A DNA stretch of 64,000 nucleotides from Diadema antillarum (lineage: Eukaryota). Positions 10,821 to 35,368 of the stretch are shown piece after piece (the stretch's first letter is position 1; every line of letters starts with the position of its first letter). A program made the translations under genes and the position numbers. The stretch is from NCBI RefSeq assembly GCF_040938485.1, contig NW_027272560.1, forward strand, positions 62,001-126,000, in the 5' to 3' direction. The notes under the pieces were generated by a model, which saw only the letters and a program-made list of their open reading frames with translations, made no database searches and was not told the DNA's origin.

Positions 10821-12164
10821 ATGGGGTCAGAGGGAACTTCAGTTGCAACAAGCACGTTGTCGATGCCAACAGGCCCCCAGTTGTTCGAGTTCAACGACTA
10901 CACCCAGCGAATCATCATCGCGGTCGTTGTTGGTGTGGTATTCCTTCTCGGCACCTCGGGCAACGGTCTCGTCATCCTCGCCGTCCTGCTCTCCAGAAAG
11001 TTGCAATCGTCGACCAACTGGTTCGTCGTCAACCTCGCTTGCGCAGACCTGTTCACATGCCTCTGCTTGCCTTTCAACATAGTGGCCTTGCTGAGCCGCG
11101 ACGGATGGCCACTTCCCGACTGGATATGCGCCGCAGCTTCGGCCGTGACTCTTACGTGCCTCGGCGCTAGCGTTATGACCCTGGCGTTAATTGCCTACAA
11201 TCGATGGTATCTTCTCACGCAACCAGCGGCAAAGTTCCAGAAACTGTACACAAAGGGCAAGATAATTGTGATGGTGATCGCTGCATGGATGTACCCCTTT
11301 CTTCTCGTGATAGTTCCGCATTTTGCTGGGCTCGGAAAGCTTGGTTACTCTAATGAGTACAAAACATGCACACAGGATACATCCTTGCCTACATCAGAGT
11401 TCTACAGCCTGCTAGCCGGTGTTATGGCCATCATACCCGTATTCCTCGCCGTGGTGATCATCTACGTAAGAATCTACCGCTTCGTCACGAAGCAGATGAA
11501 ACACATGGCTACGTTGAGGGAGACTGGTCCCGCGAGTTCGGGGACGCGGTCGGCTGTTGCTGTGGAAATGAATTCCTCAGAAGTTACTTCAGACGATGCA
11601 AGTACGACGACGACAACCAAAGCACCCTCAAGTAAAAGTCTCGCCACACTGAATAGCGATCTCGACTCTTCTCAACTCAGCCTTCCTCCACCACCAGATG
11701 AAACTCTGAACGAGGCAGCTGTGGAACCGAGGCCAGATGATACCAACGGTCCTGATCAAAGCTCAAGGAGAAGTACTGAAGGGAATTCTAACCCTTCAAA
11801 CTCCGCGGCAGCCGATCAGACGCCGCCACCCAAACAGGATAAGCGATCGTCAGTAGGAAATCCGAAGGCGTCAAGCAAACCAGCATCCTCTAAACTAGAT
11901 CGTCACCATGTCCGTGTAACCAAGAGACTTGCAGTCGTTGTAGTTGCCTTCTTCATCTGCCTATTACCTTTCGGGGTTAGCGTCGCTGTTCCGCCGAGCG
12001 ACCCAGGAATTCCCTGGACAGGTCTGCTTGTTTCGTTTAACAGCTGCATCAATCCCATGATATACGCAAGGACCATGCCCGATTTTCGAAAAGTGATGGG
12101 GTGCATCGTTCGCTGCTCCTGTAGGAGTATTCCTCAACCTGTAAGCTGCATAAGACGGCATTAG
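10821..12164 (+). CDS. Orphan class A (rhodopsin-like) GPCR 'A1', 447 aa, single coding exon, GPR84/Tre1/Moody-like
   Basis: Seven hydrophobic segments with class A landmarks: TM1 GTSGN, TM2 NLACAD, TM3 C103 plus NRW at the DRY position, TM4 W156, ECL2 C183, TM5 P206, TM6 FFICLLP, TM7 NPMIY. ~140 aa Ser/Thr-rich ICL3. No Asp3.32 (not aminergic) and no Lys7.43 (not opsin). Family assignment is from recalled similarity, not a search. Confidence 0.95.
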   Translation: MGSEGTSVATSTLSMPTGPQLFEFNDYTQRIIIAVVVGVVFLLGTSGNGLVILAVLLSRKLQSSTNWFVVNLACADLFTCLCLPFNIVALLSRDGWPLPDWICAAASAVTLTCLGASVMTLALIAYNRWYLLTQPAAKFQKLYTKGKIIVMVIAAWMYPFLLVIVPHFAGLGKLGYSNEYKTCTQDTSLPTSEFYSLLAGVMAIIPVFLAVVIIYVRIYRFVTKQMKHMATLRETGPASSGTRSAVAVEMNSSEVTSDDASTTTTTKAPSSKSLATLNSDLDSSQLSLPPPPDETLNEAAVEPRPDDTNGPDQSSRRSTEGNSNPSNSAAADQTPPPKQDKRSSVGNPKASSKPASSKLDRHHVRVTKRLAVVVVAFFICLLPFGVSVAVPPSDPGIPWTGLLVSFNSCINPMIYARTMPDFRKVMGCIVRCSCRSIPQPVSCIRRH

Positions 12165-13042
12165 CATCGAACTTTAGTGCTAGAAACGTTCACTGTTCAC
12201 GAAAGAGGGCAAGACGACGCCTGATATTTCTTACATATTTTTCGAGTCTTCTCGTGCGACATTGATAAATCTAGAAATGCCTATCATACGCTTACATAAT
12301 ACTTGTCACACTCACATCGATTCAGAAGATAACTGATTTTATGCGGAGTATTAGATCAAGGTTATATCAACAGAAACAAAGAAATATTACTTTACAATAC
12401 ATCTTTGGTGAATGCAGTTTGTTTGGTGTTATGTACACGTGGTATTTACATGTACACATGTATAATAAGATCAGAGAATCTGGAACATGGTAAACATTTT
12501 ATCATCATACATCGTGTATATTCCATATATATCACAGGCTGTAGTACACGTTATACCAATAAAACCTCTATCTTTGAAGTGAGATCAATGCATTTACGTC
12601 GTTAGAACGCGTCAACCTGAAAGAAATGTCACTCAATTGTAAATACAAAAATTGCATGAGACCTTTATGAAGGCTTTATATGATCAAGTTCTGGAACAGA
12701 ACAATGCTATATATCTCTTGGTGTCTAGACTGGATGTTTTTCATTCCCTTTTAATTCAACTGCTATAGGAAAAGTAAATGGTTCATGTTGTGATAAATTA
12801 TATTCTTAGCACATAATGTACATTAAACGCAGTGCCGTATTGATTATCTTCATACACGGTACTGATTTTCAAAAAGTAGGGACTATAATTAAATGCGCAC
12901 AAGCACGCCCTCATTAATATGCACGAATGAAAATACGTAGACTTTGTCATCATCACAAACAAGGTAGAAAACCCATGATAACCTTTCTCATAGCAAAATA
13001 TCTATTTAGAGATAGTTGGCTAGCAAGTCCACGGTTGCACGT

Positions 13043-13288
13043 CACGAGACCGACACCCACGAGTCATACAGCCCATGAGTTCGTCACTAAGCAAATAAGG
13101 CCCGTGAGTTCGACAGTAGGTAAAAGCATCTCACGAGTTCGACATTACAACACGGGACTTAATGTGTCGGTCTCGTGGACCTTGTTTGCTTAGTGTTGAA
13201 CTCATGGGCTGTAGGACTCGTGGGCTGTATACCTCGTGGGTTGTATGACTCATGATAGGCTGTATGACTCGTGGGTGTCGGTCTCGTG
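13043..13288. mobile_element. Foldback element with CACGAGACCGACACCC TIRs, ~15-bp internal subrepeats and ACGT flanks (unit 1 copy)
   Basis: Long inverted arms; ACGT at 13039-13042 and 13289-13292; present in both units. Confidence 0.75.
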
Positions 13289-15229
13289 ACGTCTCGTAGA
13301 ATGACTCCCTTAGAATTACCGATAAGAAAGCACTTTTTCTTTTGTGTATGAGTTATGCAAAGTGTATTAAAGAATATCAAATTATAAGTGAATGTCACCT
13401 GACTTGCTTACGTGAATCACCTATGTCCATATTTGGCCTTGTTTGGTCTGTTTGTTTGCATGTTATCCAGAACCTCTATGACTCGAATAGAATGAAAGCT
13501 GCTTGACCGTCGTTAATGAGAAAAAGTTTGGAGAGAATTTCGCAAGGAAAACGACGCTGTGGCACAGCGTGGCTTCCGGATAGGATCTCTGTAGACTCTG
13601 TGCATGGACCGTAATGACGCTCTCTTAATTCCTGCACTTTTCCGTCGAGTTCGTTGTGACGTAAACAGCAGGGAATAGCCAGGGGATTTTTTTTTTCAAA
13701 CTTCCTTGTCTGTCTGATGAGAAAGCTCATAAAAGAATATTTCCAACTCGAGGGATAACATTTGAAAATTCGATGGACCCTATACTGACAACTAGCAGTT
13801 GGCCCGACATTTGGTGATCTATAAGGTAGGTTAGGATTTATAATGTTACCTCATAGCGAGTTCATTTCTGTCTTCGTACGACGTGGATGAGCATGACGAG
13901 TGACCAGTGAAGTAAACCTGTACACTTTCCGGGCTCATATAATATCTCTCTCTAAGTTGTCATGTCAGGGGTAGACTCTTCCACCTATCATTATCGTAGA
14001 CTTTGGGTTAACTTACAGCTTATTTCAATCCGTTGGATAATGAACACGTCAACTGACTATGTTCTTTTTATTTCCTTCCGTACTGTGAAGTCCGTCAAAA
14101 TCTTCAGAATCGTAAATGATCCTTAGGACGGGACCATGTTCTGCATAATTATGTCATTTAGTGTTTTATATCATGATAATGATACATCCATCGTTTAAAC
14201 TTTGAGCGAGATATTGTTGCAATTCAGAAAATGACATGCAGAACATCTCTATGTACCATGTTCGTAAATTACATACACGTTTGTTTGATCGTCATACTAG
14301 TTTGATCGTCTCTCCCACGAGATAAGCTAAAATGTGTTGCATACTTTCCGGTCAAGATTTAGGAGAGTTGAACTATTGCGCAGGAAGAGCTCTTCCGCGT
14401 AAGGAGTTGCTGCAAGTATTAAAGTCGAGGGTGACATGTTCTCATTCAGGATATATTGGATTTTACTGGATATGTGAGAAGGTAATACAGCACTGCTGTA
14501 GCGAGGAATATTCTGTCATGCCGTTAGAGCTAAAGGGACGTTGTGTTTGACACATGCTGGCAGATTTGAAAAGTAACTTTTGCCATATCCTGCTACGTCT
14601 TTATCTACCAGTTTCGTTTGGGTCTGAGTAATCACCACATAGTGGTACGTAACATGTCTCATGTGAGCTTTACATAGGCATATTCTAACACAATGTCATG
14701 GCGGATTATGCTAACGGTACAGAGTTGCTAAATACAAGAAAGACATATGGCAGAACGCGACAAAAACAGAGTTTTAACAGTAAATCAATTACCTCTCTGT
14801 TTTGAATACTGGTGTTGCTTTGATACTATTGCTGGACACAATTATATAATTAGTAAACATTGATCAAACTCTACGTTGTGCGATTGATAATTGCATGAGA
14901 TTACTTGATGTGCAAATCGCAACAATTATTCCAATCAGTATAGGTGTGTAGCTTACAACAATGTACTGTTCTGAACCCTATTGGCAAAATTTTGCATGTT
15001 ATAGCTCTAATAGAATAGTGCTACACCCTTTGAAACATTTCAGTTCAGTTCAGTTTGATTTCATTTCTGTATTTTTCCACGGAAATCATACATGAAAATT
15101 ACGACACGTGTATCTGACAACAACAACAACAACAAAAATATTGCAATTAGTTTCTAGAATCATTTTCCGTTCTAACAAATTTGTATTAATTTCCCCAGCT
15201 TCCCAAATATGGAACTGTCAAAAGGAAAC

Positions 15230-16501
15230 ATGGCAACAAATGAAACCGAAGATAGCAACGGGCTCTTCGTCTTTGATGACTACAACCAACGAATCGTCAT
15301 GGCTGCCTGCATGATCGCCGTCGCCGTCACGGGCACCGTCGGCAACAGCCTCGTCATCCTCGCCGTCGCACTCTCAAGGAAACTCCAGTCGGCGACGAAC
15401 TGTTTCGTCGTCAACCTGGCCTTCGCTGACCTCATCACGTGCCTCTCTCTCCCGTTCGGCACCGTTGCCCTTCTCAGCAAGGGCGGATGGCCACTCCCCG
15501 GATGGATATGCGCGGTTACTGCTGCGATAGGCTTCATCTGCTTGGGCGCGAGCGTCATGACCCTGGCACTTATAGCATACAACAGGTGGTATCTCCTCAC
15601 AAAGCTTAAAAGCGACTTCCAAAGAGTTTATACCAAGAGGAATATCATCCTCATGGTCATCATGGCTTGGCTGTATCCCTTCATCCTGGTAGTCGTGCCA
15701 CACTTTGCTGGTCTAGGAAAGCTTGGCTACTCCAAGGAGTACAAGACGTGCACTCAAGATACTTCTCTTCCCACCTCCGAACTCTACAGCCTCTTTGCGG
15801 GGGTGTTTGCTATCATACCCGTGTTCACAGCTATCGTAATCATCTACATTCGCATATTCAGATTCGTTACTCAGCAGAGCAAGAAGATGTCCGCAGTGAT
15901 GACGGCAACACCGGCATGCTCTAGCAGACCTGTCCATGTGACAATCGAGACGAGCTCGTCAAGCGGAACTCCACTCACAGAGGGTACGTCGACAGGTGAC
16001 TCGAGTAGAGAATGCAAGTCACACTCCGATCAAGCGGAGGCTGACACAGATATCCAACACCATCAAGTTACAACGTGCTCAACGACTGAGGGCGCTTCAA
16101 ATGAGTCAAAGACATCAGTCAATGATATAAGTGGTACAGGAAGAACAACATCCCAGAGAATTCCTGAATCAAAAGGAGGTAAAACCAACACCAAGCAACA
16201 AAGGTCAGTGACAAAGTCTCCTAGACAACTAAATAGGTATCACGTGACAGTAACCAAGAGGTTGTCTGTCGTAGTTCTGGCGTTCTTCGTCTGTCTCCTA
16301 CCCTTCGGCATCAGTGTCTGTATCCCTCCGAGTGATCCCGGCATCCCTTGGACCGGGCTCCTGTTGACAGTCAATAGCTGCGTGAATCCCCTCATCTACG
16401 CACGAACCATGCCCATGTTCAGGGACGTTATGGCCTGCCTCCTCCGCTGTCGGTTCAGGCAGATTCCGGAGCCAGTCGGGTTCATAAGACGTAGGATTTA
16501 A
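15230..16501 (+). CDS. Orphan class A GPCR 'B1', 423 aa from the Met shared with B2 (430 aa if the in-frame ATG at 15209 is used)
   Basis: GTVGN, NLAFAD, C94/NRW, W147, C174, P197, FFVCLLP and NPLIY motifs; N-terminal NET sequon; clear paralogue of A1 outside ICL3. Confidence 0.95.
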   Translation: MATNETEDSNGLFVFDDYNQRIVMAACMIAVAVTGTVGNSLVILAVALSRKLQSATNCFVVNLAFADLITCLSLPFGTVALLSKGGWPLPGWICAVTAAIGFICLGASVMTLALIAYNRWYLLTKLKSDFQRVYTKRNIILMVIMAWLYPFILVVVPHFAGLGKLGYSKEYKTCTQDTSLPTSELYSLFAGVFAIIPVFTAIVIIYIRIFRFVTQQSKKMSAVMTATPACSSRPVHVTIETSSSSGTPLTEGTSTGDSSRECKSHSDQAEADTDIQHHQVTTCSTTEGASNESKTSVNDISGTGRTTSQRIPESKGGKTNTKQQRSVTKSPRQLNRYHVTVTKRLSVVVLAFFVCLLPFGISVCIPPSDPGIPWTGLLLTVNSCVNPLIYARTMPMFRDVMACLLRCRFRQIPEPVGFIRRRI

Positions 16502-17909
16502 GGGTCAGCTTTCGTTTGAGTTTGATTTATTTTCATATTTCTCAAAGATGATTACTTTAACAAAAGACGAAATTGTCGAATCTCTCAAACTGTCAAAAGT
16601 AATACTCAATACAAGTGTCGTAAAATGGTGATATTATGTAGATATTGTAGATGTATAAAAAGAGCAGAGAAGAACATGAAGGAAACCTACGAAAAGCTGA
16701 AGTTTATAGGACTTGCATGTTCAAGAAAATATAAGCTCCTGTCATCAACACCTGGAGATCAGGATTGATAAAAGATTGACCAAACGAATATCTCTATATA
16801 TTATTATACATTCATTGCAAACATCCATATGGATTCATACACGCTCAGCTTAATTTCTATAATCATTTTGGCAGAACCATGAGGTAGAGCAGATAGCTAT
16901 CTTTTCGGCTTTGTATTATAATCTGCTCATTTTTGTGACAAGCATTGTCTTCGTTGTGGCAAAACAGAATAGTGGACTGGAATGCGCATTTTTATGGTAT
17001 AATCGCATACACACATCATGATATTATACACGCATGTGTGTGTGTATATACTGCTATATGCAGTTCATTGAGAGGGAACTTAATTGTCTTTCTGTTTGCA
17101 TGGGATCGCTTCGTCTTTGTTTTAGTTTTTACTTCTCTCATGTGTGTAAGTAGGAGGATCCGCATGGAAACAGATGTAAAGATCCATAGAATGCGATATA
17201 ATGTATTTAGCTGTTCTTTCAACAGCGTTTATTTTGTTCATAAATTTACCGTTTGTATCTATACGGTTGGTTAGAAAACGGCTTCAGAACCGTATTCGCG
17301 GTACACAGATTATAGTATGAATAATATAATGAAAAACGATGTCTATTAATATTCGACTGCCTTCGTGGAGCTTTACCAATGAAATGTTCGCAAGAACGAG
17401 ATGAACTATTTTTTTTGAGGGGAGGGGTAAAATATACAGGTAATATAATGTATTGGGAGGTAGCGATCATCAAAAGCAATATAATTATCTGTTTTGTTGC
17501 AAGATCATTGGAAGGTATACATTTGTTATATATCTGCGAACTTCTCTATTTTTCGTTGTGAGTGCCAGCTGATTTCAAAGTTTGTTCGAATTGCTTATGA
17601 AGTATGACCAAATGGCATTCTTTGTGAAACTTCCATGTTTCCCACTGTGTTGCTCGCACGGTTGTTACCTCAGATTTACAATGTGATCAAATATTGCGCC
17701 TGCTTGGAGTGCGAATTCGTTTCTGCAGTGTGAGCGTCAAATTAAGATATTTCACGCCATTTTCTCACTTTATCTCTTTATGGCAAAATACGGTTCGTGA
17801 ACTCGACGATTGAATATTACCTATATGGTAGTTGTGAGTTGGATATTTGATCATGTGTATGTACTTATAGTACTTATGAATAAACACCAACAGACAGGTT
17901 TACATAGGC

Positions 17910-23964: not shown

Positions 23965-24894
23965 AGAAGCTTTACCCTTCTGGACGCATTGGGATTGTAA
24001 TCCTGTCCCAAGGCAGAACCATCCGGAATTCTGTGATTATCGGGAGATAATCTTACACATTTCCAGCATTTTGCTAGACTCACGAACGAGCAAACCGTCG
24101 GTTCGTGCGCCATCTTTCTAGCCCATTATGGAAGGCCGAAAATCACACTAATATATATTGCGCGCGCGCATACATTTAACACACAATCACCGCCACATAT
24201 GATGCGCTAATACTAGCCTACGTATGAGAAGCCGAAATTGCAAAAACAATTCAGCGCGAACAGCACAAGCACAAGATGAGCACGTCAGTGGAGGTATGTA
24301 TAAGGGGCAGTAATACCCACCTTGACAAACCTTTATTTGCATTCATTTATTTTTTTCATTTCCAACAGAATCATACAGGAATAGAATGCACACATTATGA
24401 CACCGTATACAATAAACGATATTTACACTCTTGCAAGACATTTTAAGTAAGCAGGGCCGGCGGAACAGGGGATGGGGGGGGGGGGGCTCGGCCACTCCCC
24501 ACTTTTTTTTCACCATAATACATAAGGTGTCACCCACTTTGGGACCCCCAATTTCTTTTCTTTTTTAACCCCGGAAGTGCGTAAGTGGCACTAGAAAGGC
24601 TTTGATTTCCGCTGACTTTTTTGTTTGGTTTGTTTTGTTGTTGTTGGTGGTGGTGGTTTTGTTTTGTTTTGTTTTGTTTTTTTGCTTTTCCACCACACCT
24701 TTCTTTATAAAAATGCTTGCGCGTTCAAGATGGTTGAGATCGAACAGAAATAAGAACGATGTGCTGTTATAATGCAGCCTCCATCTTTATCACTGTTATC
24801 TTTTTAAGGTGGCGTCATTCGCAAAACATCGTAATCGTCTCTTTCCAAATATCAGAATAAGATCATTCCAACCGTGTGTCACTGTCTATAGGCA

Positions 24895-25315
24895 CACAGT
24901 AAGAAATACGGGTTCAAATTTGAACCCCCAAATTATCGCTATACAACCACCCTATAGGGTGCAACTTTGCACCCCAATAAGCAATTTGCACCCTTGGAGG
25001 TGCAATAAGCTGAATTTTTAACCTAAAGGGGTGCGAATTTGCACCCTCAGTTTCGTGCTAATCGAGGGTGCAAACATGCGCCATAAACATTAATACACCG
25101 TGAATTGAAAATTTGGACCACGAGTACCAAGGTTTTACTCGTAAGATCAAACTTACATGCACTCTGATGGATATGTCTGCATCTTTGTAGGTACGAATAT
25201 GAATATCAAGATATTCAATTTTCTACTTGCATAATAAAAGGTGCAAATGTGCACCCCAGGGTGCTGCTATCGGGACAAATAGGGTGCAAATTTGAACCTT
25301 CATTTTTTTAGTGTG
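24895..25315. mobile_element. CACAG/CACAC-terminal MITE with GCACCC/GGGTGC subrepeats, 2-bp TSD (CA/TA), unit 2 only
   Basis: CACAGTAAGAAA...TTTTTTTAGTGTG with subterminal ggttcaaattt/aaatttgaacc; unit 1 empty site ctataggCAtagtgtg at ~7346. Confidence 0.85.
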
Positions 25316-26136
25316 TATAGTGTGTGAAATTAGTGCACATTTGACTTATTGGCACTGAAAGGGTTAAACAGGGGCATAACATTACAGCTATATAACAAAG
25401 AGTGGCAGACAAAACTCGAATCAATCAAACCTGAGAAACAAACGCTTATAATTTTGGATCGATTGAAGCCTATTTAAAACAAGCAAGACGGGAAAAAGTC
25501 TTTGAATGTGTGTCAGGCACAGAAATAGGCCGCTAAAATGCTTCACTTCTTTAATCCTTATCAAAAGTATATAATGCACCCTGATTACTTATGCTGACAT
25601 CTCTTTCCCTTTATTAACATTATGTATATATACCAGTATGCTGTACTGATTATGTAGAAATGGAGAAAAGTTATTGAACTTGAACCTTGAACAAAATGAA
25701 TGATGTGGAGGAAACGCATCAACAGTTATCATAATGTCGCCGTAGGATTGAATCCAAGTGATCAAAAATAGTTTCCCTTACGCTGCAAGGTCTGAAAATA
25801 TATGTAACATAAGCACAGTCTCCCTTACTGCTAATATATACTGAAGCTACTGAAAATCGTAAGAAGTCGAACATTTTCATGCACACATCCTACCTCAAGA
25901 CTGAATGCAATGTTTAGCATTCCCCATACCGAACAATGCCGAATTTGACGACAATTAAAAAAGCGCACCAAAGATTCCAGCTCCTTTTCCACGTACTTTT
26001 CCGCTATTTGCAGAGCTTGGAATCTTGTAATCATAACAGTCCACCGAATCAGTTGATCTGGCATGGTTGTGAATTGTACTACAAATTGTAAAATTTCAGT
26101 TGTTGATTTCGTTGCTCGTGGAAACCAGAGAGACTC

Positions 26137-26230
26137 AATTTAATTCAACTCAATTCATCTTTATTTTCATTTCCATTAAATAAACAAGGAAAATTATATA
26201 CAATGCATTAACAGAACATACCTGTGTAGA
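26137..26230 (-). mobile_element. ~95-bp reverse-oriented LINE tail, unit 2 only
   Basis: Homologous to 62-116 plus 282-297; agact occurs on both sides; absent at unit 1 ~9107. Confidence 0.55.
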
Positions 26231-27546
26231 CTGCGTAGGAGTACCTATAATGAGGGAAAACCAATGCGTAGGCCTATTGACTGGACTACAAGCACTGAAA
26301 TACATCTAGTCGAAGCAGATCCATAATGGATAAGAGGCCTTCAGAAAAAAAAAATCTTATCAAAATGCATTGATAGCTTTGTCTGGTTTTCCTCATAACT
26401 CCCAACAACAACAACAATTGCTTATAAAAGAAATATGACAACACTTGATATTTCATTCTTGTGACGTATGCATCTTCTCGTATTCATGACTGGATTCGTA
26501 ACTGTGAAAAGTTCTGCCCATTTATACCAGGTTATGAGGACAGCGTTGCATAGTTTATCCAAGGTTACCACTGATTTGACTAATAAAGATATACAGGCAC
26601 GTAGGATCAAAATTGACATGCAGATATTTATTTGGAGTTTTGAAAGTCATCGAATGCATTTGGGGATCTCATGTCTCCTCAAGGAATAGAATGATCTGGT
26701 TAAGCTAGTTTGATTCTCTTTTGGTGTAAATTTTCTCGTACTTATTAATGACTAGATTTGTAACTGTGTAAGGTTGTGCCTGTCGTACCAGAAACTGGTA
26801 AAGCGCTTTATTTCCCACCCTTCATTTGTTATTAAAGAAATCGAAATGTATGATACATCATGATATTTTGGATTCATTGAAGACTAGGGATTCCTTTGAG
26901 GAAGTTGAGATAACCATGTACCTCTTTTACATTATTTGCAAATAGGCGCGTGCAAATATGGGTAGCCATGCAGTACTACTTTTGTGCGAGCATTTTTTTA
27001 TTCTTGCTCAGCCTATATTTGTTACTTGCTTTGTGAATATTGACCCATTACGCCCTCCCTCAATACACTCACCTTTTGACTCTGGCAGGCCATAAAACCA
27101 ACCCGGATCTTTCTCCCACTATTTACAAGCGATTTGTTAATGTTATTCATGATTACGAAATGTCGAATATAGGGTATCACGGTGCGATACGTTCAGTTCT
27201 TAGGAATACATGTGCTGTCCTTCATCAAATATCTAAAGCTAATCTATCTATGACGAATTGTCCATCTTGCATTACACCAGTTCGTATTCAATCAAATTTC
27301 ATCACACAGTCAATGACAGTGTCAAAACAGTTGGATAATTTAAAAGTCATAAGTGTAATGCCAATAATGCCAATATCTATTAAATTTCAATGCAATTCAA
27401 ATTATTCTATTTCCATACAAAGTAATGCAAGATAATATACATAACGCTCTCATGAGTAAGGAATTTCAAATCACATAAATTCCAATAGTATATAATGCAA
27501 TCATGGTAATTTTGTCTTTATATTTCGATAAATGAAATAAGTAAGC

Positions 27547-27992
27547 CAGGGCTCGACACTAACGGTGGCCCGGTGGCCCGGGGCCACCAAAAATGAAAGT
27601 CGGGCCACCAAATTTAAAAAAAAGGGAAAATTTGGTGGCCCGCCTCGGGCCACCAAATTTTTTTGAAAAGTATGTCAATAAATTCGTAACTTTTTGCGCC
27701 GGAAATTAGCAGTTAAATTTGTTTAAAGGATGAAAAGGACTGAATGAGTGCCTGAGAGTGAGTGTTGCAAGTTTGTTGAAGTCTATTTATGAGTAGATAA
27801 TTATGTCCAACTTCTAATTCTTACTATCATAAAACTTAAATATTTGACTCATTAAAAAAAAAGGATTTTTAATGTTTTTTATTGTTTCTTTTCGGGACAC
27901 CAAATTCTTCTCTCGGGCCACCAAAAATTTGAAATGTAGGATTTTGGTGGCCCCATCGGGCCACCAAACAAAAAAGTTAGTGTCGAGCCATG
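27547..27992. mobile_element. Longer member of the same CAGGGCTCGACACTAA MITE family, 7-bp TSD (AGTAAGC), unit 2 only
   Basis: AGTAAGC at 27540-27546 and 27993-27999; unit 1 empty site ctaAGTAAGCgattaaaat near 10455; 364 bp upstream of the A2 ATG. Confidence 0.92.
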
Positions 27993-28356
27993 AGTAAGCG
28001 ATTAAAATTATATTGTACATTTGTATAACTGTATATGGAAAAAGAGAAATCCACAAGAAAATCAAAGCTTGTAAATTTTGTGAATTACTAGTTGAAGATA
28101 ATGGCATCTCAAGATCAACCAAGGACTCCATGTATGAAAATCTTAACATCATGACGTCAGAGAAAGGAAAGAGAAAAAAAGATTATAACAAGGACAAGGA
28201 CGAAAACAAGGACATACAGCATATGCCAAGGAAATACAGCATACTAGACACTCGTATTTGATATGGTATTTGTAATGATGTCCTTTCCCACGATTTGTTG
28301 AGTGCTGTTGTATCATCTTTGCAGATAAAGCCGACGGCTGAGAACATCATCTCCCG

Positions 28357-29700
28357 ATGGGGTCAGAGGGAATTTCAGTTGCAACAAGCACGTTGTCGAT
28401 GCCAACGGGCCCCCAGTTGTTCGAGTTCAACGACTACACCCAGCGAATCATCATCGCGGTCGTTGTTGGTGTGGTATTCCTTCTCGGCACCTCGGGCAAC
28501 GGTCTCGTCATCCTCGCCGTCCTGCTCTCCAGAAAGTTGCAATCGTCGACCAACTGGTTCGTTGTCAACCTCGCTTGCGCAGACCTGTTCACATGCCTCT
28601 GCTTGCCTTTCAACATAGTGGCCTTGCTGAGCCGCGACGGATGGCCACTTCCCGACTGGATATGCGCCGCAGCTTCGGCCGTGACTCTTACGTGCCTCGG
28701 CGCTAGCGTTATGACCCTGGCGTTAATTGCCTTCAATCGATGGTATCTTCTCACGCAACCAGCGGCAAAGTTCCAGAAACTGTACACAAAGGGCAAGATA
28801 ATTGTGATGGTGATCGCTGCATGGATGTACCCCTTTCTTCTCGTGATAGTTCCGCATTTTGCTGGGCTCGGAAAGCTTGGTTACTCCAATGAGTACAAAA
28901 CATGCACGCAGGATACATCCTTACCTACATCAGAGTTCTACAGCCTGCTAGCCGGTGTCATGGCCATCATACCCGTATTCCTCGCCGTGGTGATCATCTA
29001 CGTAAGAATCTACCGCTTCGTCACGAAGCAGATGAAACACATGGCTACGTTGAGGGAGACTGGTCCCGCGAGTTCGGGGACGCGGTCCGCTATTGCTGTG
29101 GAAATGATTTCCTCAGAAGTTACTTCAGACGATGCAAGTACAACGACGACAACCAAAGCACCCTCAAGTAAGAGTCTCGCCACATTGAATAGCGATCTCG
29201 ACTCTTCTCAACTCAGCCTTCCTCCACCACCAGATGAAACTCTGAACGAGGCAGCTGTGGAACCGAGGCCAGATGATACCAACGGTCCTGATCAAAGCTC
29301 AAGGAGAATTACTGAAGGGAATTCTAACCCTTCAAACTCCGCAGCAGCAGATCAGACGCCGCCACCCAAACAGGATAAGCGATCGTCAGTAGGAAATGCG
29401 AAGGCGTCAAGCAAACCAGCATCCTCTAAACTAGATCGTCACCATGTCCGTGTAACCAAGAGACTTGCAGTCGTTGTAGTTGCCTTCTTCATCTGCCTAT
29501 TACCTTTCGGGGTTAGCGTCGCTGTTCCGCCGAGCGACCCAGGAATTCCCTGGACAGGTCTGCTTGTTTCGTTTAACAGCTGCATCAATCCCATGATATA
29601 CGCAAGGACCATGCCCGATTTTCGAAAAGTGATGGGGTGCATCGTTCGCTGCTCCTGTAGGAGTATTCCTCAACCTGTAAGCTGCATAAGACGGCATTAG
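28357..29700 (+). CDS. Orphan class A GPCR 'A2', 447 aa, duplicate of A1
   Basis: Intact ORF; 6 amino-acid differences from A1 (T6I, Y126F, V246I, N251I, S318I, P348A) and ~12 synonymous differences by hand count. Confidence 0.95.
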   Translation: MGSEGISVATSTLSMPTGPQLFEFNDYTQRIIIAVVVGVVFLLGTSGNGLVILAVLLSRKLQSSTNWFVVNLACADLFTCLCLPFNIVALLSRDGWPLPDWICAAASAVTLTCLGASVMTLALIAFNRWYLLTQPAAKFQKLYTKGKIIVMVIAAWMYPFLLVIVPHFAGLGKLGYSNEYKTCTQDTSLPTSEFYSLLAGVMAIIPVFLAVVIIYVRIYRFVTKQMKHMATLRETGPASSGTRSAIAVEMISSEVTSDDASTTTTTKAPSSKSLATLNSDLDSSQLSLPPPPDETLNEAAVEPRPDDTNGPDQSSRRITEGNSNPSNSAAADQTPPPKQDKRSSVGNAKASSKPASSKLDRHHVRVTKRLAVVVVAFFICLLPFGVSVAVPPSDPGIPWTGLLVSFNSCINPMIYARTMPDFRKVMGCIVRCSCRSIPQPVSCIRRH

Positions 29701-30499
29701 AATCGAACTTTAGTGTTAGACACGTTAGAAACGTTCGCTGTTCATGAAAGAGTGCAAGACGACGTCTGCGATATTTCTGACATTTTTTCGAGTCTTCTCG
29801 TGCGACTTTGATAAATCTATAAATGCCTATCATACGCTTACATAATACTTGTCACACTCACATCGATTCAGAAGAGAACTGATTTTATGCTAGAGTATTA
29901 CATCAAGGTAATATCAACAAAAACGTATAAATATTGCTTTCCAATACATCTTTTGTGCATGCAGTTTGTTTTGGTGTTATGTACCTGGTATTTACATGTA
30001 CGTATGTATAATAAGATCAGAGAATCTGGAACATGGTAAACATTTTACCATCATACATCGTGTATATTTCAAATATATTACAGGCTGTAGTTTACATTTA
30101 AACCAATAAAGCCTCAGTTTTTAAAGTGATATCAATGCATTTACGTCGTCAGAAAGCTTCTACCTGAAATGAATTTCTCTCAATTGTAAATAGAAAACCA
30201 ACCAATTGCACGAGACCATTATGAGGGCTTTTTATGATTAAGTTCACTAATAACAGAACAGTGCTATATATTTCTAGGTGTCTAGACTGGATGTTTTTCA
30301 CTCCCTTTTAATTCTGCTGTAGGAAAAGTGAATGATTCATGTTGTGACATATTCCTAACATATATACATTAAATGCAGTGCCGTATATCTTTTATACGGC
30401 TCTAATTAAACGTATAGGGACATCAATTCATTGCGCAAAACCACGCCCTCATTAGCATGCACGAATACAAATACGTACACCAAGTCCACGGGTGCACGT

Positions 30500-30762
30500 C
30501 ATGAGACCGACGCCCACGAGCCATACAGCCCAAGAGTCATACAGCCCATGAGTCAGACAGCCCACGAGTCATACAACCCATGAGTTCGTCACTAAGCAAA
30601 TAAGGCCCATGAGTTCGACATTACAACACGGGACTTCCAATGTGTCGGTCTCGTGGACCTTGTTTGCTTAATGTGGAACTCATGGGCTGTAGGACTCGTG
30701 GACTGTATACCTCGTGGGTTGTTTGACTCATAGGCTGTCGACTCGTGGGTGTCGGTCTCGTG
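30500..30762. mobile_element. Unit 2 copy of the same foldback element, with more subrepeats in the left arm
   Basis: gagtcatacagcccat-type unit repeated about 4-5 times on the left; ACGT flanks at 30496 and 30763. Confidence 0.75.
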
Positions 30763-30962
30763 ACGTCTCGTGGAATGACCCTCTTAGATTACCGATATGA
30801 TTGAACTTTTTCTTTTGTGTATGAGTTATGCAGAGTATATTAAAGAATATCAAATTATAAGAGAATGTCACCTGACTTGCTTACATGAATCACCTATGTC
30901 TATGTTTGGCCTTGTTTGGTCTGTTTGTTTGCATGTTATCCAGAAATTTTATGACTCGAATA

Positions 30963-31052
30963 TCCTTTTGTAAAATGTCAAATGTTTAATGAATTGGTTA
31001 AATAAACTTGAAACTTGAAACTTGAAACTTGAAACTTGAAACTTGAAACTTG
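30963..31052 (+). mobile_element. Very short LINE 3'-tail insertion with (AAACTTG)7, unit 2 only
   Basis: aataaa followed by seven heptamer copies at 31004-31052; absent at unit 1 ~13490-13505. Confidence 0.6.
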
Positions 31053-32704
31053 ACCGTCGTTAATGAGGAAACTTTAGAGGGAATTTCGCAAGAAATACGA
31101 TGCTGTGGCACAGATTGGCTTCCCGTTAGGACCTCTGCGCATGGACCGTAATGACGCTCTCTTAATCCCTACACTTATCCGTCGAGTTCATTGTCACGTA
31201 AACAGCAGGGATAGCCAGGGGATTTATTTTTTCAAACTTCCTTGTTTGCCTGATGAGAAAGTTCATAAAAGAATCTTTCCAACTCGAGTGATAACATATG
31301 AAAATTCGATGGACCCTACTGACAACTAGCAGTTGGCCCGACATTTGGTGATCTATAAGGTAGGTTAGGATTTATAATGTTACCTCATAGCGAGTTCATA
31401 TCTGTCTTCGTACAACGTGGATAAGCATGAAGAGTGATCAGTGAAGTAGACCTGTACACTTTCTTGGCTTCGATACTATCTCTTAAAGTCTGTAGAAAAT
31501 TATTAGGGATAGACTCCTTCATCTATCATTATTGTAGACTTTGGGTTAACGTACATCTCCTTTCAATCCATTGGATAATGAAATGTAAAATGATTATGTT
31601 CTTCCTGGTATTTGCTTTCACACAGGAAAGCCAATCAAAATAGTCAGAATCACTAATTATTCCTGCGACAGAATAATGTTCTGACTGTGTTATTTAGTGT
31701 TTTATATCATGGTGATGAATTACATCCACCGTTTAAGCATTGAGCTATAAAATGTTGCAAATCAGAAAATGACATGTTGAACATCTCTATGTACCATGTT
31801 CGTAAATTACATACAGGTATGTATGTCTGTCTGTAGACTACTTTGATCGTCTCTCCCATGAGATAAGCTAAAATGTGTTGCATACTTTCCCGTCAAGATT
31901 TAGGAGAGCTGAACTATTGCGCAGGAAGAGCTTTTCCGGTTAAGGAGTTGCTACAAGTATTAAAGTCGAGGGTGACACGTTCTCATTCAGGATATATTGG
32001 ATTTTACTGGATATGTGAGAAGGTAATACAGCACTGCTGTAGCGAGGAATATTCTGTCATGCCGTTAGAGCTAAAGGGACGTTGTGTTTGACACACGCTG
32101 GCAGATTTGAAAAGTGACTGTTGCCATATCCTGCTACGTCTTTATCTACCAGTTCCGTTTGGGTCTGAGTAATCACCACATAGTGGCACGCAACATGTCT
32201 CCTGTGTGCTTTACATAGGCATATTCCGACACAATTGTCATGGCGGATTGTGCTAACGACACAGAGTTGCTAAATACATTAAAGGCATATGGAAGAACAT
32301 GGCAAACACGGAATTCTAACAGTAGACCAATTACCCTTTCTGTTTTGAATGAATGCTGGCGCTGCAAAGTTTCACTTTTATTATTTCATGGAGTGGAGGG
32401 GTCGTAGGTTGAAATCATTTTTGAATACTATTACTGGACCCAATCATATTAGTCAATATTGATCAAATTTTATATCGCGCAATGGGTAATTGCAGGAGAT
32501 TACTTGTGCAAATCGTAACAATTATTCCAATCAGTAGGCAGCGGTAGACCTATATCTTACAGTAATGCATAGTTCTCAACCCATTTGGCAACAATTTGTT
32601 GCTCTAATAATTTATAGTGCTACGCCCTTTGGAAATATTTCAATTCAGTTCAATTTAGGTTGATTTTATTTCTGCATTTTTCTACGGATATCATACATGA
32701 AAAT

Positions 32705-33216
32705 GATAAATTGTTGCCAACTGGGTTGCCCAATGAAATTCGTAACGCATCAACTTTAAGATCTTTTCAAATGTCATTATCTGATTATCTACATAGAGCA
32801 TTATGGTAAAACAAGGACTCAATGGAGTACCAAATGTAACAGCCACTTCTTTTTTCTCTTTTTTTCTCTTTTTTTGAGGGGGGTATATGAGTCTTGCCTT
32901 TTCTTTTGTAAATTTGTTCTCCTCCTCTTATTTTCTTTTTCTTGCTCTGCTTTTCTCTACCTATCTCTGATTATTGTTGACTCTCACTGTACCAGTTCGA
33001 TATATGATTCTCATTATTTTTTCTTTTGTTTTGTATATACAGTGTATTATTCTTGCATTGTAAATTTGGGACCCTGTGGAAGAACAGACATATTTTGAAA
33101 ATATGACTGAACAGGCAATCCCCCGTTTCTTCTGTACGTATATGCAATGCATAACTTGTAATGTGTGTATTCTTTATATGAAGATGGAAATAAAACAAAC
33201 AATAACAAACATACAA
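32705..33216 (+). mobile_element. ~510-bp unit-2-only insertion ending in a LINE-like 3' tail, ~115 bp upstream of the B2 ATG
   Basis: Absent between catgaaaat and acacgtgtatctg in unit 1 (~15100); gggaccctgtggaagaacag motif, aataaa and (caaa)-type tail. Boundaries approximate. Confidence 0.6.
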
Positions 33217-33330
33217 ACACGTGTATCTGACAACAACAACAACAACAACAAAAATATTTCATTTAATCTTAAAAACCGTTTTCCGTCCCAACTCTAATTT
33301 ATGTTAATTTTAGAACGGTTAGAAGGAAAG

Positions 33331-34602
33331 ATGGCGGCAAATGACACCGAAGACAGCAACGGGCTCTTCGTATTTGATGACTACAACCAACGAATCGTCA
33401 TGGCTGTCTGCATGCTTGCCGTCGCCGTTACCGGCACCGTGGGCAACAGCCTCGTCATCCTCGCCGTCGCACTCTCAAGGAAACTCCAGTCGGCGACGAA
33501 CTGTTTCGTGCTCAACCTGGCCTTCGCTGATCTCATCACGTGCCTCTTTCTCCCGTTCGGCATCGTGGCCCTTCTCAGCAAGGGTGGATGGCCACTCCCC
33601 GGATGGATATGCGCGGTTGCAGCTGCGATGGGCCTCATCTGCTTGGGCGCGAGCGTCATGACCCTGGCACTTATAGCGTACAACAGGTGGTATCTTCTCA
33701 CAAAGCTTAAAAGCGACTTCCAGAGAGTCTATACCAAGAGGAATATCATCCTTATGATCATCATAGCTTGGCTGTATCCCTTCGTCCTGGTAGTCGTGCC
33801 ACACTTTGCTGGTCTAGGAAAGCTTGGCTACTCCAATGAGTACAAGATGTGCACTCAAGATACTTCTCTTCCCACCTCCGAACTATACAGCCTCTTTGCG
33901 GGGGCGTTTGCTATCATACCCGTGTTCACAGCCATCGTCATCATCTACATTCGCATATTCAGATTCGTTACTCAGCAGAGCAAGAAGATGTCCGCAGTGA
34001 TGACGGCAACACCGGCATGCTCTAGCAGACCTGTCCATGTGACAATCGAGACGAGCTCGTCAAGCGGAACTCCACTCACAGAGGTTACGTCGACAGGTGA
34101 CTCGAGTACAGAAAGCAAGTCACACTACGATCAAGCGGAGGCTGACACAGATATCCAACACCATCAAGTTACAACGAGCTCAACGACTGAGGGCGCTTCA
34201 GTTGAGTCAAAGACATCAGTCAATAATGTAAGTGGTACAGAAAGAAAAACATCCCAGAGAATTCCTGAATCAAAAGGAGGTAAAACCAACACCAAGCAAC
34301 AAAGGTCAGGGACAAAGTCTCCTAGACAACTAAATAGGTATCACGTGACAGTCACCAAGAGGTTGTCTGTCGTAGTTCTGGCGTTCTTCGTCTGTCTCCT
34401 ACCCTTCGGCATCAGTGTCTGTATCCCTCCGAGTGATCCCGGCATCCCTTGGACCGGGCTCCTAATGACAGTCAACAGCTGCGTGAATCCCCTCATCTAC
34501 GCACGAACCATGCCCGTGTTCAGGGACGTTATGGCCTGCCTCCTCCGCTGTCGGTTCAGGCAGATTCCGGAACCAGTTGGGTTCATAAGACGTAGGATTT
34601 AA
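33331..34602 (+). CDS. Orphan class A GPCR 'B2', 423 aa, duplicate of B1
   Basis: Intact ORF; 29 amino-acid and ~25 synonymous differences from B1 by hand count. The ATG at 33331 aligns with B1 15230. The longer track start at 33301 lies in pyrimidine-rich, acceptor-like sequence not shared with B1. Confidence 0.93.
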   Translation: MAANDTEDSNGLFVFDDYNQRIVMAVCMLAVAVTGTVGNSLVILAVALSRKLQSATNCFVLNLAFADLITCLFLPFGIVALLSKGGWPLPGWICAVAAAMGLICLGASVMTLALIAYNRWYLLTKLKSDFQRVYTKRNIILMIIIAWLYPFVLVVVPHFAGLGKLGYSNEYKMCTQDTSLPTSELYSLFAGAFAIIPVFTAIVIIYIRIFRFVTQQSKKMSAVMTATPACSSRPVHVTIETSSSSGTPLTEVTSTGDSSTESKSHYDQAEADTDIQHHQVTTSSTTEGASVESKTSVNNVSGTERKTSQRIPESKGGKTNTKQQRSGTKSPRQLNRYHVTVTKRLSVVVLAFFVCLLPFGISVCIPPSDPGIPWTGLLMTVNSCVNPLIYARTMPVFRDVMACLLRCRFRQIPEPVGFIRRRI

Positions 34603-34661
34603 GGGTCAGCTTTCGTTTGAGTTTGATATATTTTCATATTTCTCAAAGATGATGACTTTAA

Positions 34662-35045
34662 AGGGATGGTACAGTATTGGTAGAGATGAGAATTGGGCTT
34701 TTAACTTTTTGCGAGATACCAAGAAAACACTTATGATATAGTACAGAGCATACTATTTTAAGAGGAATTCAAAGTTTATTTGATGAAAATCGGGTGTGGA
34801 ATGACTGAAACATCAAAAAACAAAGTAAAACAAAGCGATCGTAATAAAGTGTGGGTCCCACACTTTTTTAGAATCGCTCTTTTTTGGATATCTCAGCCAT
34901 TTCAAAACCAATTTTCATCAAATAAATGTTGAATTCCTCATAGAATTACATGCCCTTTCATATTCATAAGAGGTTCCTCATTATCTCACAAAAAAAAAAT
35001 GTTAGAAACCTGAAATTAGGTCTTAACCAAAACTGTACGATTCCT
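34662..35045. mobile_element. AGGGATGGTACAGT-family MITE, TTAA TSD (Kolobok-like), unit 2 only, 59 bp after the B2 stop codon
   Basis: TTAA at 34658 and 35046; unit 1 empty site actTTAAcaaaagacg at ~16557. Related internal sequence at ~18640-18930, ~39130-39420 and ~42030-42404. Confidence 0.88.
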
Positions 35046-35332
35046 TTAACAAAAGACGAAATTGTCGAATCTCTCAAACTGTCAAAAGTAATACTCAATA
35101 CAAGTGTCGTAAAATGGTCATATTATGTAGATATTGTAGATGTATAAAAAGAGCAGAGAAGAACATGAAGGAAACCTACGAAAAGCTGAAGTTTATAGGA
35201 CTTGCATTTTCAAGAAAATATAAGCTCCTATCATCAACACCTGGAGATCAGGATTGATAAAATATTGACCAAACGAATATCTGTATATATTATTGTATAT
35301 TCATTGCAAACATCCACATGGATTCATACACA

Positions 35333-35368
<36 letters not shown>

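What the first reader, a model, noticed from the sequence alone, without database searches (positions are those of the whole stretch)
11316..16363. Receptors A and B have frozen extracellular loops but unalignable third intracellular loops: a possible 'same ligand, different wiring' pair
Seen: ECL2 PHFAGLGKLGYS(N/K)EYKTCTQDTSLPTSE (A1 11316-11399, B1 15698-15781) is 27/28 identical, yet 17 of the 28 codons differ synonymously. ECL3/TM7 PPSDPGIPWTGLL (A1 11991-12029, B1 16325-16363) is 13/13 identical with 11 synonymous codon differences. This pattern fits strong purifying selection across an old split rather than gene conversion. The ~125-140 aa ICL3s cannot be aligned. Established: ECL2 is usually among the most variable parts of class A paralogues and shapes ligand access, while ICL3 shapes G-protein, GRK and arrestin engagement. 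Inference: A and B may sense the same or a very similar ligand but signal differently, or act as a heteromer, and are kept together as a module.
Basis: partly seen in the sequence, partly recalled or inferred. Interest (0 to 1): 0.75.

Follow-up and report, generated by a model that had tools for sequence, protein, structure and literature searches.

The report
Sea urchin orphan receptor pair, conserved cap
Two neighbouring single-exon receptor genes of a Diadema sea urchin do share almost identical outer loops, but those loops are the trademark of a whole echinoderm-only family of orphan, putatively chemosensory receptors, so they do not show that the two genes sense the same ligand.

Summary
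A1 and B1 share 27/28 residues in ECL2 with 17 synonymous codon differences, and 13/13 in ECL3 with 11. Non-synonymous divergence in the two loops is 0.022 against 0.208 in the rest of the 7TM core. Synonymous sites are saturated, so gene conversion is not the cause. The central third intracellular loops cannot be aligned.

- The same ECL2 and ECL3 motifs occur in about 120 echinoderm homologues, from sea urchins to starfish. These include Acanthaster ApOR17-19, already catalogued as putative olfactory receptors.
- A and B differ at pocket positions 2.60, 2.61, 3.28, 3.29, 3.32, 3.33, 5.38, 5.42 and 5.46. This argues against an identical ligand in the canonical pocket.
- The membrane-proximal ends of ICL3 are conserved. 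The disordered centres are both rich in serine and threonine. Between Diadema orthologues they evolve under weak constraint in A and nearly neutrally in B.
- Even so, A-B loop identity exceeds the family baseline, with the largest residual of 276 pairs. Some extra shared constraint is real.

The A-B unit is duplicated about 17.5 kb downstream, and D. setosum shares this arrangement. No RNA data could be found. I rate this a new member of a known kind, of modest interest.

The parts
10821..12164 (+). Receptor A1: single-exon class-A GPCR, 447 aa
   Evidence: ORF. Pfam 7tm_1 E 2e-46. Identical to a public protein model on this contig.
11316..11399 (+). A1 ECL2 (residues 166-193): beta-hairpin holding the disulfide Cys183
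   Evidence: Translation. AF2 strands 173-177/182-186 with pLDDT above 90. Family-wide motif.
11526..11885 (+). A1 disordered centre of ICL3 (residues 236-355), 31% Ser+Thr and 12% Pro
   Evidence: AF2 shows no secondary structure here and pLDDT of about 42-60. Composition. pN/pS about 0.3 against the D. setosum orthologue.
11991..12029 (+). A1 ECL3 and the top of TM7 (residues 391-403)
   Evidence: Family motif P-x-S-D-P-x-I-P-W/Y-T.
15209..16501 (+). Receptor B1: single-exon class-A GPCR. The ORF is 430 aa; public models start at 15230 (423 aa).
15698..15781 (+). B1 ECL2
15896..16225 (+). B1 disordered centre of ICL3 (110 aa), 36% Ser+Thr
16325..16363 (+). B1 ECL3 and the top of TM7
28357..29700 (+). 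Receptor A2, the copy of A1 in the second duplication unit (441/447 aa identical, dS 0.038)
33301..34602 (+). Receptor B2, the copy of B1 in the second unit (394/423 aa identical, dS 0.088). Its ECL2 differs from B1 at two residues (K to N and T to M).
4064..17312 (.). Duplication unit 1, colinear with 24261-35812 at 87-98% identity
   Evidence: blastn of the window against itself. The same two units exist in D. setosum.
24261..35812 (.). Duplication unit 2

Best explanation
A and B are two old paralogues, and the only two found in Diadema, of one subclade of an orphan rhodopsin-type GPCR family found here only in echinoderms. They are intronless and tandemly arrayed. Starfish members of the family have been catalogued as putative olfactory receptors.

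The whole extracellular face is a conserved architectural cap across this family. It comprises the juxtamembrane N-terminus (F-x-D-Y-x-Q-R), ECL1 (G-W-P-L-P-x-W-x-C), the disulfide-anchored ECL2 beta-hairpin and ECL3. The 'frozen' loops therefore mostly reflect family-wide structural or access constraint.

Diversification between paralogues, including A versus B, sits in the upper TM2/TM3/TM5 wall of the pocket and in the disordered centre of ICL3, which is rich in serine and threonine. That centre is most likely a phosphorylation and regulation spacer in which length and composition, not sequence, are maintained.

Shown: the conservation pattern, the family distribution, the pocket differences, and the selection regime on ICL3.
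Inferred: that the cap acts as a lid, as ECL2 does in melatonin receptors and GPR84; that ligands differ between A and B; and the chemosensory role.
For: - Family distribution. 75 word-indexed homologues reach E 1e-10 or better, and all 72 above E 1e-38 are echinoderm or unnamed. 213 cluster representatives score below 1e-30. Every named protein in a sample of ten was an echinoderm protein.
- Loop motifs are present from Diadema, Strongylocentrotus and Lytechinus to Asterias, Patiria and Acanthaster.
- Over 120 homologues, ECL2 has a majority-residue frequency of 0.50. This compares with 0.51-0.56 for TM1, TM3 and TM6, 0.42-0.44 for TM4 and TM5, and 0.11 for ICL3. The best-kept ECL2 residues are Pro, Gly, Tyr and Cys.
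- Family-wide, pocket positions are less conserved than other TM positions (0.43 vs 0.56, Mann-Whitney p 0.009). Positions 3.32, 3.33, 3.28, 5.38 and 7.43 are the most variable.
- A and B differ at 2.60, 2.61, 3.28, 3.29, 3.32, 3.33, 5.38, 5.42, 5.46, 7.42 and 7.43. They are identical at all listed TM6 and upper TM7 positions.
- Family hallmarks: N3.49 in 101 of 122 sequences, no Trp at 6.48 in any, and NPxxY kept.
- The AF2 model is confident (pLDDT 81, pTM 0.76) and shows an ECL2 hairpin.
- Closest solved relatives by profile are GPR50 (E 2e-51), aminergic receptors, GPR84 and MT1. GPR84 is top by VIA-align with Z 29.1, but this is effectively tied with many others.
- ICL3: unalignable centre; pN/pS about 0.3 in A and 0.6-1.3 in B against 0.08-0.3 in the core; the length of 110 aa is unchanged in all five B sequences.
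- ApOR17, 18 and 19 of Acanthaster carry the same motifs (PMC5442662, supplementary files 2 and 3). ApOR18 was detected by in situ hybridisation in tube feet and sensory tentacles.
Against: - A-B loop identity (0.96 and 1.00) is well above what equally diverged family pairs show. A family-wide structural constraint alone does not explain all of it.
- The model coordinates could not be inspected, so contact between ECL2 and the pocket is not demonstrated.
- Overall, A and B are identical at 23 of 34 pocket positions against 114 of 153 other TM positions, which is not a significant difference (p 0.40). 'Different pocket' therefore rests on where the changes lie, not on their number.
- No expression data exist for Diadema.
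- The pocket position list and the lid analogy come from general GPCR knowledge, not from this protein.
Confidence: 0.6

Rival explanations
1. One reading: A and B bind the same or a very similar ligand through identical ECL2 and ECL3, and differ in G-protein, GRK or arrestin engagement through divergent ICL3s, or act as a heteromer.
For: Loop pN is 0.022 against 0.208 in the core, with saturated pS. A1-B1 has the largest positive ECL2 residual of 276 family pairs. All listed TM6 and upper TM7 pocket positions are identical. The A-B adjacency is conserved in D. setosum and was duplicated as a unit. ICL3 in A is under some constraint (pN/pS about 0.3) and differs from B in proline content (12% vs 5%) and in length.
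Against: The loops are a family signature. Nine upper-pocket residues on TM2, TM3 and TM5 differ, including 3.32 and 3.33. The membrane-proximal parts of ICL3, helix 8 and the NRW motif are conserved, though only about half of ICL2 is. ICL3 in B drifts almost neutrally. In D. setosum, A2 is disrupted next to an intact B2. There are no expression or interaction data.
Confidence: 0.17
2. The conserved extracellular face is the docking site for a conserved echinoderm peptide or protein ligand, or for an accessory subunit, that is shared by the whole family. The variable pocket wall tunes efficacy or a second, small ligand.
For: All four extracellular elements are conserved across sea urchins and starfish, including polar surface residues (K-T-C-T-Q-D-T-S), not only Gly, Pro and Cys.
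Against: No candidate partner is known. Polar loop residues become variable in the more distant sea cucumber and brittle star members. Nothing here tests binding.
Confidence: 0.13
3. Self-activating receptors: the invariant ECL2 hairpin occupies the orthosteric site as a built-in agonist, as reported for GPR52 and GPR21, so no diffusible ligand is needed.
For: ECL2 is frozen. The family lacks the W6.48 toggle and has N3.49 instead of D3.49. GPR21, GPR52, GPR161 and GPR101 appear among the structural matches at Z 26-27. Papers on ECL2-mediated self-activation exist (PMC9839698, PMC12444479).
Against: Those matches are not separable from about 50 other class-A receptors within 4 Z units. Variable pocket residues are hard to reconcile with one fixed internal agonist.
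Confidence: 0.08
4. Loop identity is a residue of gene conversion between A and B.
For: Conversion does seem to act in this cluster between the A copies. A1, A2 and A3 differ by 0.3-1.3% although the two units predate the split of the two Diadema species.
Against: Between A and B, synonymous divergence in the loops is saturated and higher than in the core (pS 0.91 vs 0.72).
Confidence: 0.02

Closest known systems
Acanthaster planci putative olfactory receptors ApOR17, ApOR18 and ApOR19 (Roberts et al. 2017, PMC5442662) and, more broadly, the sea urchin 'surreal-GPCR' / echinoderm OR-like expansions
   Same: Same protein family. The ApOR17-19 sequences in the paper's supplementary FASTA carry the same ECL2 motif (G-Y-S-E-K-Y-K-T-C-T-Q-D-T-S) and ECL3 motif (P-P-S-D-P-x-I-P-W-T). 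They correspond to my hits P0039 and P0056. Like A and B they are rhodopsin-type, orphan and tandemly arrayed, with a variable ICL3.
   Different: Roberts et al. describe high substitution rates in the extracellular loops of the ApOR set they aligned. This subfamily shows the opposite. The starfish members have a much shorter ICL3 (375-400 aa proteins). Assignment of A and B to a named surreal-GPCR group (A-F) could not be tested, because no surreal reference sequences were available.
Melatonin receptor group (MT1, MT2, GPR50)
   Same: GPR50 is the best solved-structure hit for the family profile (E 1.9e-51). Both have Asn at 3.49 (N-R-Y in melatonin receptors, from my own knowledge; N-R-W/L/Y/F here). 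Both have an ECL2 beta-hairpin. In MT1 and MT2 it closes the pocket, and that is also from my own knowledge.
   Different: Identity is only about 25%. TM7 here has N-P-x-x-Y, whereas I recall melatonin receptors having N-A-x-x-Y. Position 4.60 is Pro here. The extracellular motifs are unique to echinoderms. A and B are not members of this group.
GPR84 (medium-chain fatty-acid receptor)
   Same: Top structural match (Z 29.1, rmsd 2.8 over 281 residues, 24% identity) and a profile hit at E 9e-45. Both have a long ICL3, an ECL2 hairpin and no D3.32. One sea urchin homologue is auto-named 'GPR84-like'.
   Different: The Z score is effectively tied with opioid, somatostatin, opsin and adrenergic receptors, so there is no specific relationship.
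Aminergic receptors (beta-adrenergic, 5-HT1, muscarinic)
   Same: Best single-sequence PDB hits (beta2AR E 7e-24). Automatic annotation uses their names for family members. They also have a long disordered ICL3, as in M2 and alpha2 receptors.
   Different: D3.32, which defines amine binding, is Thr in A and Gly in B and is variable across the family. The TM5 serines and W6.48 are absent, and DRY is replaced by NRW.

Membership tests
Rhodopsin-type (class A) GPCR | 7tm_1 profile match, plus N1.50, D2.50, R3.50, W4.50, P6.50, NPxxY and the C3.25-ECL2 disulfide pair | tested here: met
   Pfam PF00001 E 2e-46 and 4e-45. All anchor residues are present in A and B and in at least 116 of 122 homologues. 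The AF2 model is a 7TM bundle with pTM 0.76.
Echinoderm OR-like GPCR subfamily containing ApOR17-19 | Shared diagnostic ECL2 and ECL3 motifs, plus N3.49-R-aromatic/Leu and no W6.48 | tested here: met
   Motifs are present in A, B, sea urchin and starfish homologues and in the ApOR17-19 supplementary sequences.
Echinoderm OR-like GPCR subfamily containing ApOR17-19 | Expression in chemosensory organs (tube feet, tentacles, pedicellariae) | not testable with these tools
   No RNA run holds the locus. The three runs found cover genes and spacers alike, so they behave as DNA. Only ApOR18 in Acanthaster has in situ data.
[quoted passage not shown] | Intronless, tandemly clustered, lineage-specific expansion within echinoids | tested here: met
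   Single ORFs. Tandem A-B-A-B arrangement. Separate Diadema and camarodont expansions in the tree.
[quoted passage not shown] | Placement inside one of the named groups A-F of Raible et al. 2006 | not tested
The S. purpuratus accession numbers of homologues were not found in the paper library.
Biogenic-amine receptors | Asp at 3.32, plus TM5 Ser and W6.48 | tested here: not met
   Position 3.32 is Thr in A and Gly in B. Positions 5.42, 5.43 and 5.46 are L/A/M in A and F/A/F in B. Position 6.48 is Leu.
Melatonin receptors | N-R-Y at 3.49-3.51 together with N-A-x-x-Y in TM7 (feature list recalled from memory) | tested here: not met
   N-R-W at 3.49-3.51, but N-P-M/L-I-Y in TM7. Only about 25% identity to GPR50 and MT1.

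The most novel reading that the evidence does not exclude
This family, found here only in echinoderms, has kept its whole extracellular face nearly unchanged since sea urchins and starfish diverged, while varying the canonical ligand-contact residues 3.32, 3.33 and 5.38 and lacking the W6.48 toggle. It may use an unusual activation logic: a fixed cap that either acts as a built-in agonist or docks a conserved echinoderm-specific partner, with the variable pocket acting as a modulatory site. In that case the Diadema A/B pair, whose caps differ at only one residue despite about 32% divergence in the core, would be two differently tuned and differently regulated readers of one extracellular signal.
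Probability: 0.15. Interest if true: 0.6.

Novelty: new member of a known kind. Interest (0 to 1): 0.35.

Why it matters
Echinoderm 'olfactory-like' GPCRs are all orphans, and they are usually described as having fast-evolving extracellular loops. This subfamily is an exception. Its extracellular cap is as conserved as its helices from sea urchins to starfish, while its pocket wall varies.

That makes it a tractable entry point for deorphanisation. The constant cap could be used as a handle for antibodies, or for chimeras that swap only the pocket wall. It also offers a test of whether conserved ECL2 lids mark lateral or gated ligand entry, or self-activation, outside vertebrates.

For the specific A/B claim, the result is mainly a correction. 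Identical loops in two paralogues cannot be read as 'same ligand' until the family background is known.

Tried and rejected
- Assembly artefact or retained haplotype as the cause of the A-B-A-B array: rejected. The N gap (17910-18037) does not coincide with a unit boundary. D. setosum has the same two units, and the two B types are older than the species split.
- Gene conversion as the cause of loop identity: rejected on synonymous saturation.
- RNA evidence for co-expression: no RNA run holds the locus. The three runs laid down cover genes and spacers at similar depth and carry 2-5% differences, so they are DNA of related individuals.
- Fold searches: Foldseek and VIA-align both return generic class-A matches within a few Z units of each other, so no specific relative emerges.
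- Surreal-GPCR group assignment: neither the accession numbers nor reference sequences could be found. The holothurian paper's supplements lack the motifs.
- Positive selection on ICL3 in B: there are 17 codons with amino-acid changes against 4 synonymous-only codons. The low synonymous count is consistent with ICL3's lower GC3 (0.42 vs 0.68) and lower CpG content. The pN/pS ratio of about 1.3 was not tested against 1.
- The ungapped codon count for the A copies is invalid, because dsA1 carries indels. I used the gapped codon alignment instead.
The N run was not filled. No spliced or joined models were needed, because all the genes are single-exon.
Full report
**What is there**

The window carries four uninterrupted + strand ORFs that encode rhodopsin-type GPCRs (Pfam 7tm_1 E 2e-46 and 4e-45):
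- A1, 10821-12164, 447 aa
- B1, 15209-16501, 430 aa
- A2, 28357-29700
- B2, 33301-34602

The nearest public proteins are from Diadema. A is 94% identical to a D. setosum protein. The cluster members identical to A1, A2, B1 and B2 lie on a 514,773-bp contig that is unnamed in the look-up. Another contig of the D. antillarum assembly carries one further A-B pair. Public gene models treat both genes as single-exon, and B starts at its eighth codon (423 aa).

**Checking the observation**

ECL2 is 27/28 identical with 17 synonymous codon differences, and ECL3 with the top of TM7 is 13/13 with 11.

An AlphaFold2 model built on 122 homologues (mean pLDDT 81, pTM 0.76) confirms the topology:
- TM4 at 145-168
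- a confident ECL2 beta-hairpin at 173-177/182-186
- TM5 at 192-235
- no structure at 236-355
- TM6 at 356-389
- TM7 at 394-418

Nei-Gojobori counts for A1 vs B1:

| Region | pN | pS |
|---|---|---|
| ECL2 + ECL3 | 0.022 | 0.91 |
| Rest of the 7TM core | 0.208 | 0.72 |

Fisher's test on the non-synonymous counts gives p about 1e-6. Because the loops were chosen by eye, I also ran a scan test. A 28-residue window with 27 or more identities arises in 301 of 5000 shuffles of the core identity vector. ECL2 alone is therefore only marginal (p about 0.06), and the case rests on ECL2 and ECL3 together.

Synonymous sites are saturated along the whole gene (pS 0.77). The central ICL3s (126 and 110 aa) are not alignable: Smith-Waterman z = 1.4, with 42 of 500 shuffles scoring as high.

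**The loops are a family signature**

A word-indexed search found 75 homologues at E 1e-10 or better. All 72 above E 1e-38 are echinoderm or unnamed, and the next hits are insect and crustacean receptors at 1e-18 or weaker. An exhaustive search found 213 cluster representatives below 1e-30. Of ten sampled, every named one came from a brittle star, a sea cucumber or a starfish.

Sea urchin paralogues carry G-L-G-K/R-L-G-Y-S-x-x-Y-K-T/A/S-C-T/S-Q-D-T-S-L-P-x-S and P-P-S-D-P-G-I/V-P-W-T-G. Starfish carry G-I-G-K-W-G-Y-S-D/E-K-Y-K-T-C-T-Q-D-T-S and P-P-S-D-P-V-I-P-W-T-G.

Majority-residue frequency over 120 homologues, some only about 30% identical to A1:

| Region | Majority-residue frequency |
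|---|---|
| ECL2 | 0.50 |
| TM1, TM3, TM6 | 0.51-0.56 |
| TM4, TM5 | 0.42-0.44 |
| ICL3 | 0.11 |

The most invariant ECL2 residues are P166, G170, G172, G175, Y176, Y180 and C183, which form a structural skeleton. The polar surface K-T-C-T-Q-D-T-S is kept within the sea urchin and starfish subfamily. The consensus also shows conserved F-x-D-Y-x-Q-R just before TM1 and G-W-P-L-P-x-W-x-C in ECL1. The whole extracellular face is therefore conserved.

**What remains special about A and B**

In a maximum-likelihood tree, four groups form an unresolved set (support 93): the A clade, the B clade, an unnamed sea urchin clade and a camarodont clade of ten Strongylocentrotus and Lytechinus proteins. The A-B path length is about 1.06 substitutions per site. 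The split is therefore about as old as the divergence of Diadema from camarodont sea urchins.

For pairs with 0.60-0.80 core identity, ECL2 identity usually lies between 0.5 and 0.89. A1-B1 has 0.96, and 1.00 in ECL3, at a core identity of 0.68. This is the largest positive residual among 276 pairs. The pairs are not independent, so this is not a probability.

**Evidence against 'same ligand'**

I numbered the helices from their invariant anchors (N48, D76, R128, W156, P206, P383, P412) and compared 34 canonical ligand-contact positions. The list of positions comes from general GPCR knowledge.
- A and B differ at 2.60, 2.61, 3.28, 3.29, 3.32 (Thr vs Gly), 3.33 (Leu vs Phe), 5.38, 5.42, 5.46, 7.42 and 7.43.
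- They are identical at every listed TM6 and upper TM7 position.
- The three TM5 differences fall at i, i+4 and i+8, which is one helical face.
- In number, the pocket is not more diverged than other TM positions (23/34 vs 114/153 identical, p 0.40). The argument rests on where the changes lie.
- Family-wide, pocket positions are significantly less conserved than other TM positions (0.43 vs 0.56, p 0.009). Positions 3.32, 3.33, 3.28, 5.38 and 7.43 are the most variable.

The pattern is a constant cap over a variable pocket wall.

**Evidence against 'different wiring'**

The parts of a class-A receptor that contact G proteins are largely conserved between A and B. These are the cytoplasmic ends of TM3 (A-Y-N-R-W-Y-L-L-T is identical), TM5 and TM6 (H-V-x-V-T-K-R-L) and helix 8. 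ICL2 is the exception, at 47% identity. What cannot be aligned is the disordered centre.
- Both centres are rich in Ser and Thr (31% and 36%), poor in hydrophobic residues (10-11%) and similarly charged. A is richer in proline (12% vs 5%).
- Against D. setosum orthologues, the ICL3 of A has pN/pS about 0.3, compared with 0.11 in its core.
- The ICL3 of B has ratios of 0.6-1.0, or cannot be computed because there are no synonymous changes.
- Over five B sequences, ICL3 shows 17 codons with amino-acid changes and 4 with synonymous changes only. The core shows 25 and 38 (Fisher p 0.002). ICL3 length stays at 110 aa.

This is what a spacer or phospho-regulatory loop selected for composition would look like. 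It does not demonstrate distinct coupling, and it does not exclude it either.

**Evidence on the 'module' idea**

Window 4064-17312 is colinear with 24261-35812 at 87-98% identity, which makes this a segmental duplication of about 17.5 kb containing A and B. D. setosum chromosome OZ188201.1 has the same two units.
- Unit 1 has intact A and B in the same orientation, about 3.1 kb apart.
- Unit 2 has an intact B, but its A copy has lost 49 bp at CDS positions 173-221, which shifts the frame.
- B1 is closer to the D. setosum B1-type gene (2.9% nucleotide difference) than to B2 (4.3%). The duplication therefore predates the species split.

Adjacency is conserved within Diadema. However, an intact B next to a broken A shows that the pairing is not obligatory in cis. 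Deeper synteny cannot be traced, because the camarodont genes are co-orthologous to both A and B.

**Relation to known families**

- Single-sequence PDB searches hit beta-adrenergic receptors best (E 7e-24).
- The family profile hits GPR50 best (2e-51), then aminergic receptors, GPR84 and MT1.
- Structure searches give GPR84 at Z 29.1, with opioid, somatostatin, opsin, GPR21, GPR52 and GPR161 within about 3 Z units. This gives no specific assignment.
- The family has N3.49 (101/122) in place of the DRY aspartate, no Trp at 6.48 (Leu, Ile, Phe or Val instead), and an intact NPxxY.
- It is not aminergic, because D3.32 is absent. It is not a melatonin receptor either.

The family has been met before. 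The supplementary FASTA of Roberts et al. 2017 (PMC5442662) lists ApOR17, 18 and 19 of Acanthaster planci with the same motifs, and predicts Gi/o coupling for them. ApOR18 was localised by in situ hybridisation to tube-foot epidermis and myomesothelium and to a few sensory-tentacle cells. That paper, however, reports high substitution in the extracellular loops of the ApOR set it aligned. The conserved cap of this subfamily does not seem to have been pointed out.

**Limits**

- No RNA run was found. The three runs laid down behave as genomic DNA, so co-expression is untested.
- The model coordinates could not be inspected.
- The assignment of pocket positions assumes helices without gaps.

**Verdict**

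The functional reading overreaches. The loops mark a family of orphan, putatively chemosensory GPCRs that is restricted to echinoderms as far as these searches show. A and B differ where class-A ligands usually bind. The ICL3 difference is ordinary drift of a disordered loop.

The excess A-B cap identity is real but unexplained. I rate this a new member of a known kind, with interest 0.35.

Noticed in passing
window 4064-17312 vs 24261-35812; L001, L002 (D. setosum OZ188201.1); L003 (D. antillarum JBFRCO010001352.1): The A-B unit is a segmental duplication of about 17.5 kb shared with D. setosum. A second D. antillarum contig (L003) carries a single-unit form: unit-1 upstream sequence and an A1-like gene joined to a B2-like gene and unit-2 downstream sequence. 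This looks like a copy-number haplotype made by unequal recombination.
   Followed up: partly
L002:5062-6353: In D. setosum the second A copy lacks 49 bp, corresponding to A1 CDS positions 173-221 (TM1-ICL1-TM2). This shifts the frame. The remainder is still 95-96% identical at the protein level, so the disruption is recent, or it is an assembly error.
   Followed up: partly
window 10821-12164, 28357-29700; L003:10001-11344: The three D. antillarum A copies differ by only 0.3-1.3% in nucleotides, although the duplication predates the species split (the B types differ by 4.3%). All three are closer to D. setosum's broken A2 (3.2%) than to its A1 (5.2%). This suggests concerted evolution or gene conversion among the A copies only.
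   Followed up: partly
Across five B sequences the synonymous rate in ICL3 is about a third of that in the core. This coincides with lower GC3 (0.42 vs 0.68) and fewer CpGs. The pN/pS ratio is about 1.3; whether it exceeds 1 was not tested.
   Followed up: partly
window 12867-13457: A very high-copy repeat lies in the A1-B1 spacer. Summed contig depth exceeds 50,000 in all three public runs, against about 20-60 in the flanks, and there are many rearranged junctions.
   Followed up: no
window 36083-37195: An insertion of about 1.1 kb is present here but absent from the matching places of L002 and L003. It holds a 246-aa ORF (36268-37008) with no Pfam match, probably a fragment of a mobile element.
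   Followed up: no
window 45921-48482 (-): An 853-aa ORF has an N-terminal somatomedin-B-like domain (below the Pfam cutoff) and a secretin/adhesion-type 7tm_2 domain that covers only the first about 184 of 250 profile positions. The gene probably continues in another exon.
   Followed up: no
window 61226-61840 (+): A 204-aa ORF has a weak PH-domain match (E 0.0035, below the Pfam cutoff). It is probably one exon of a larger gene.
   Followed up: no
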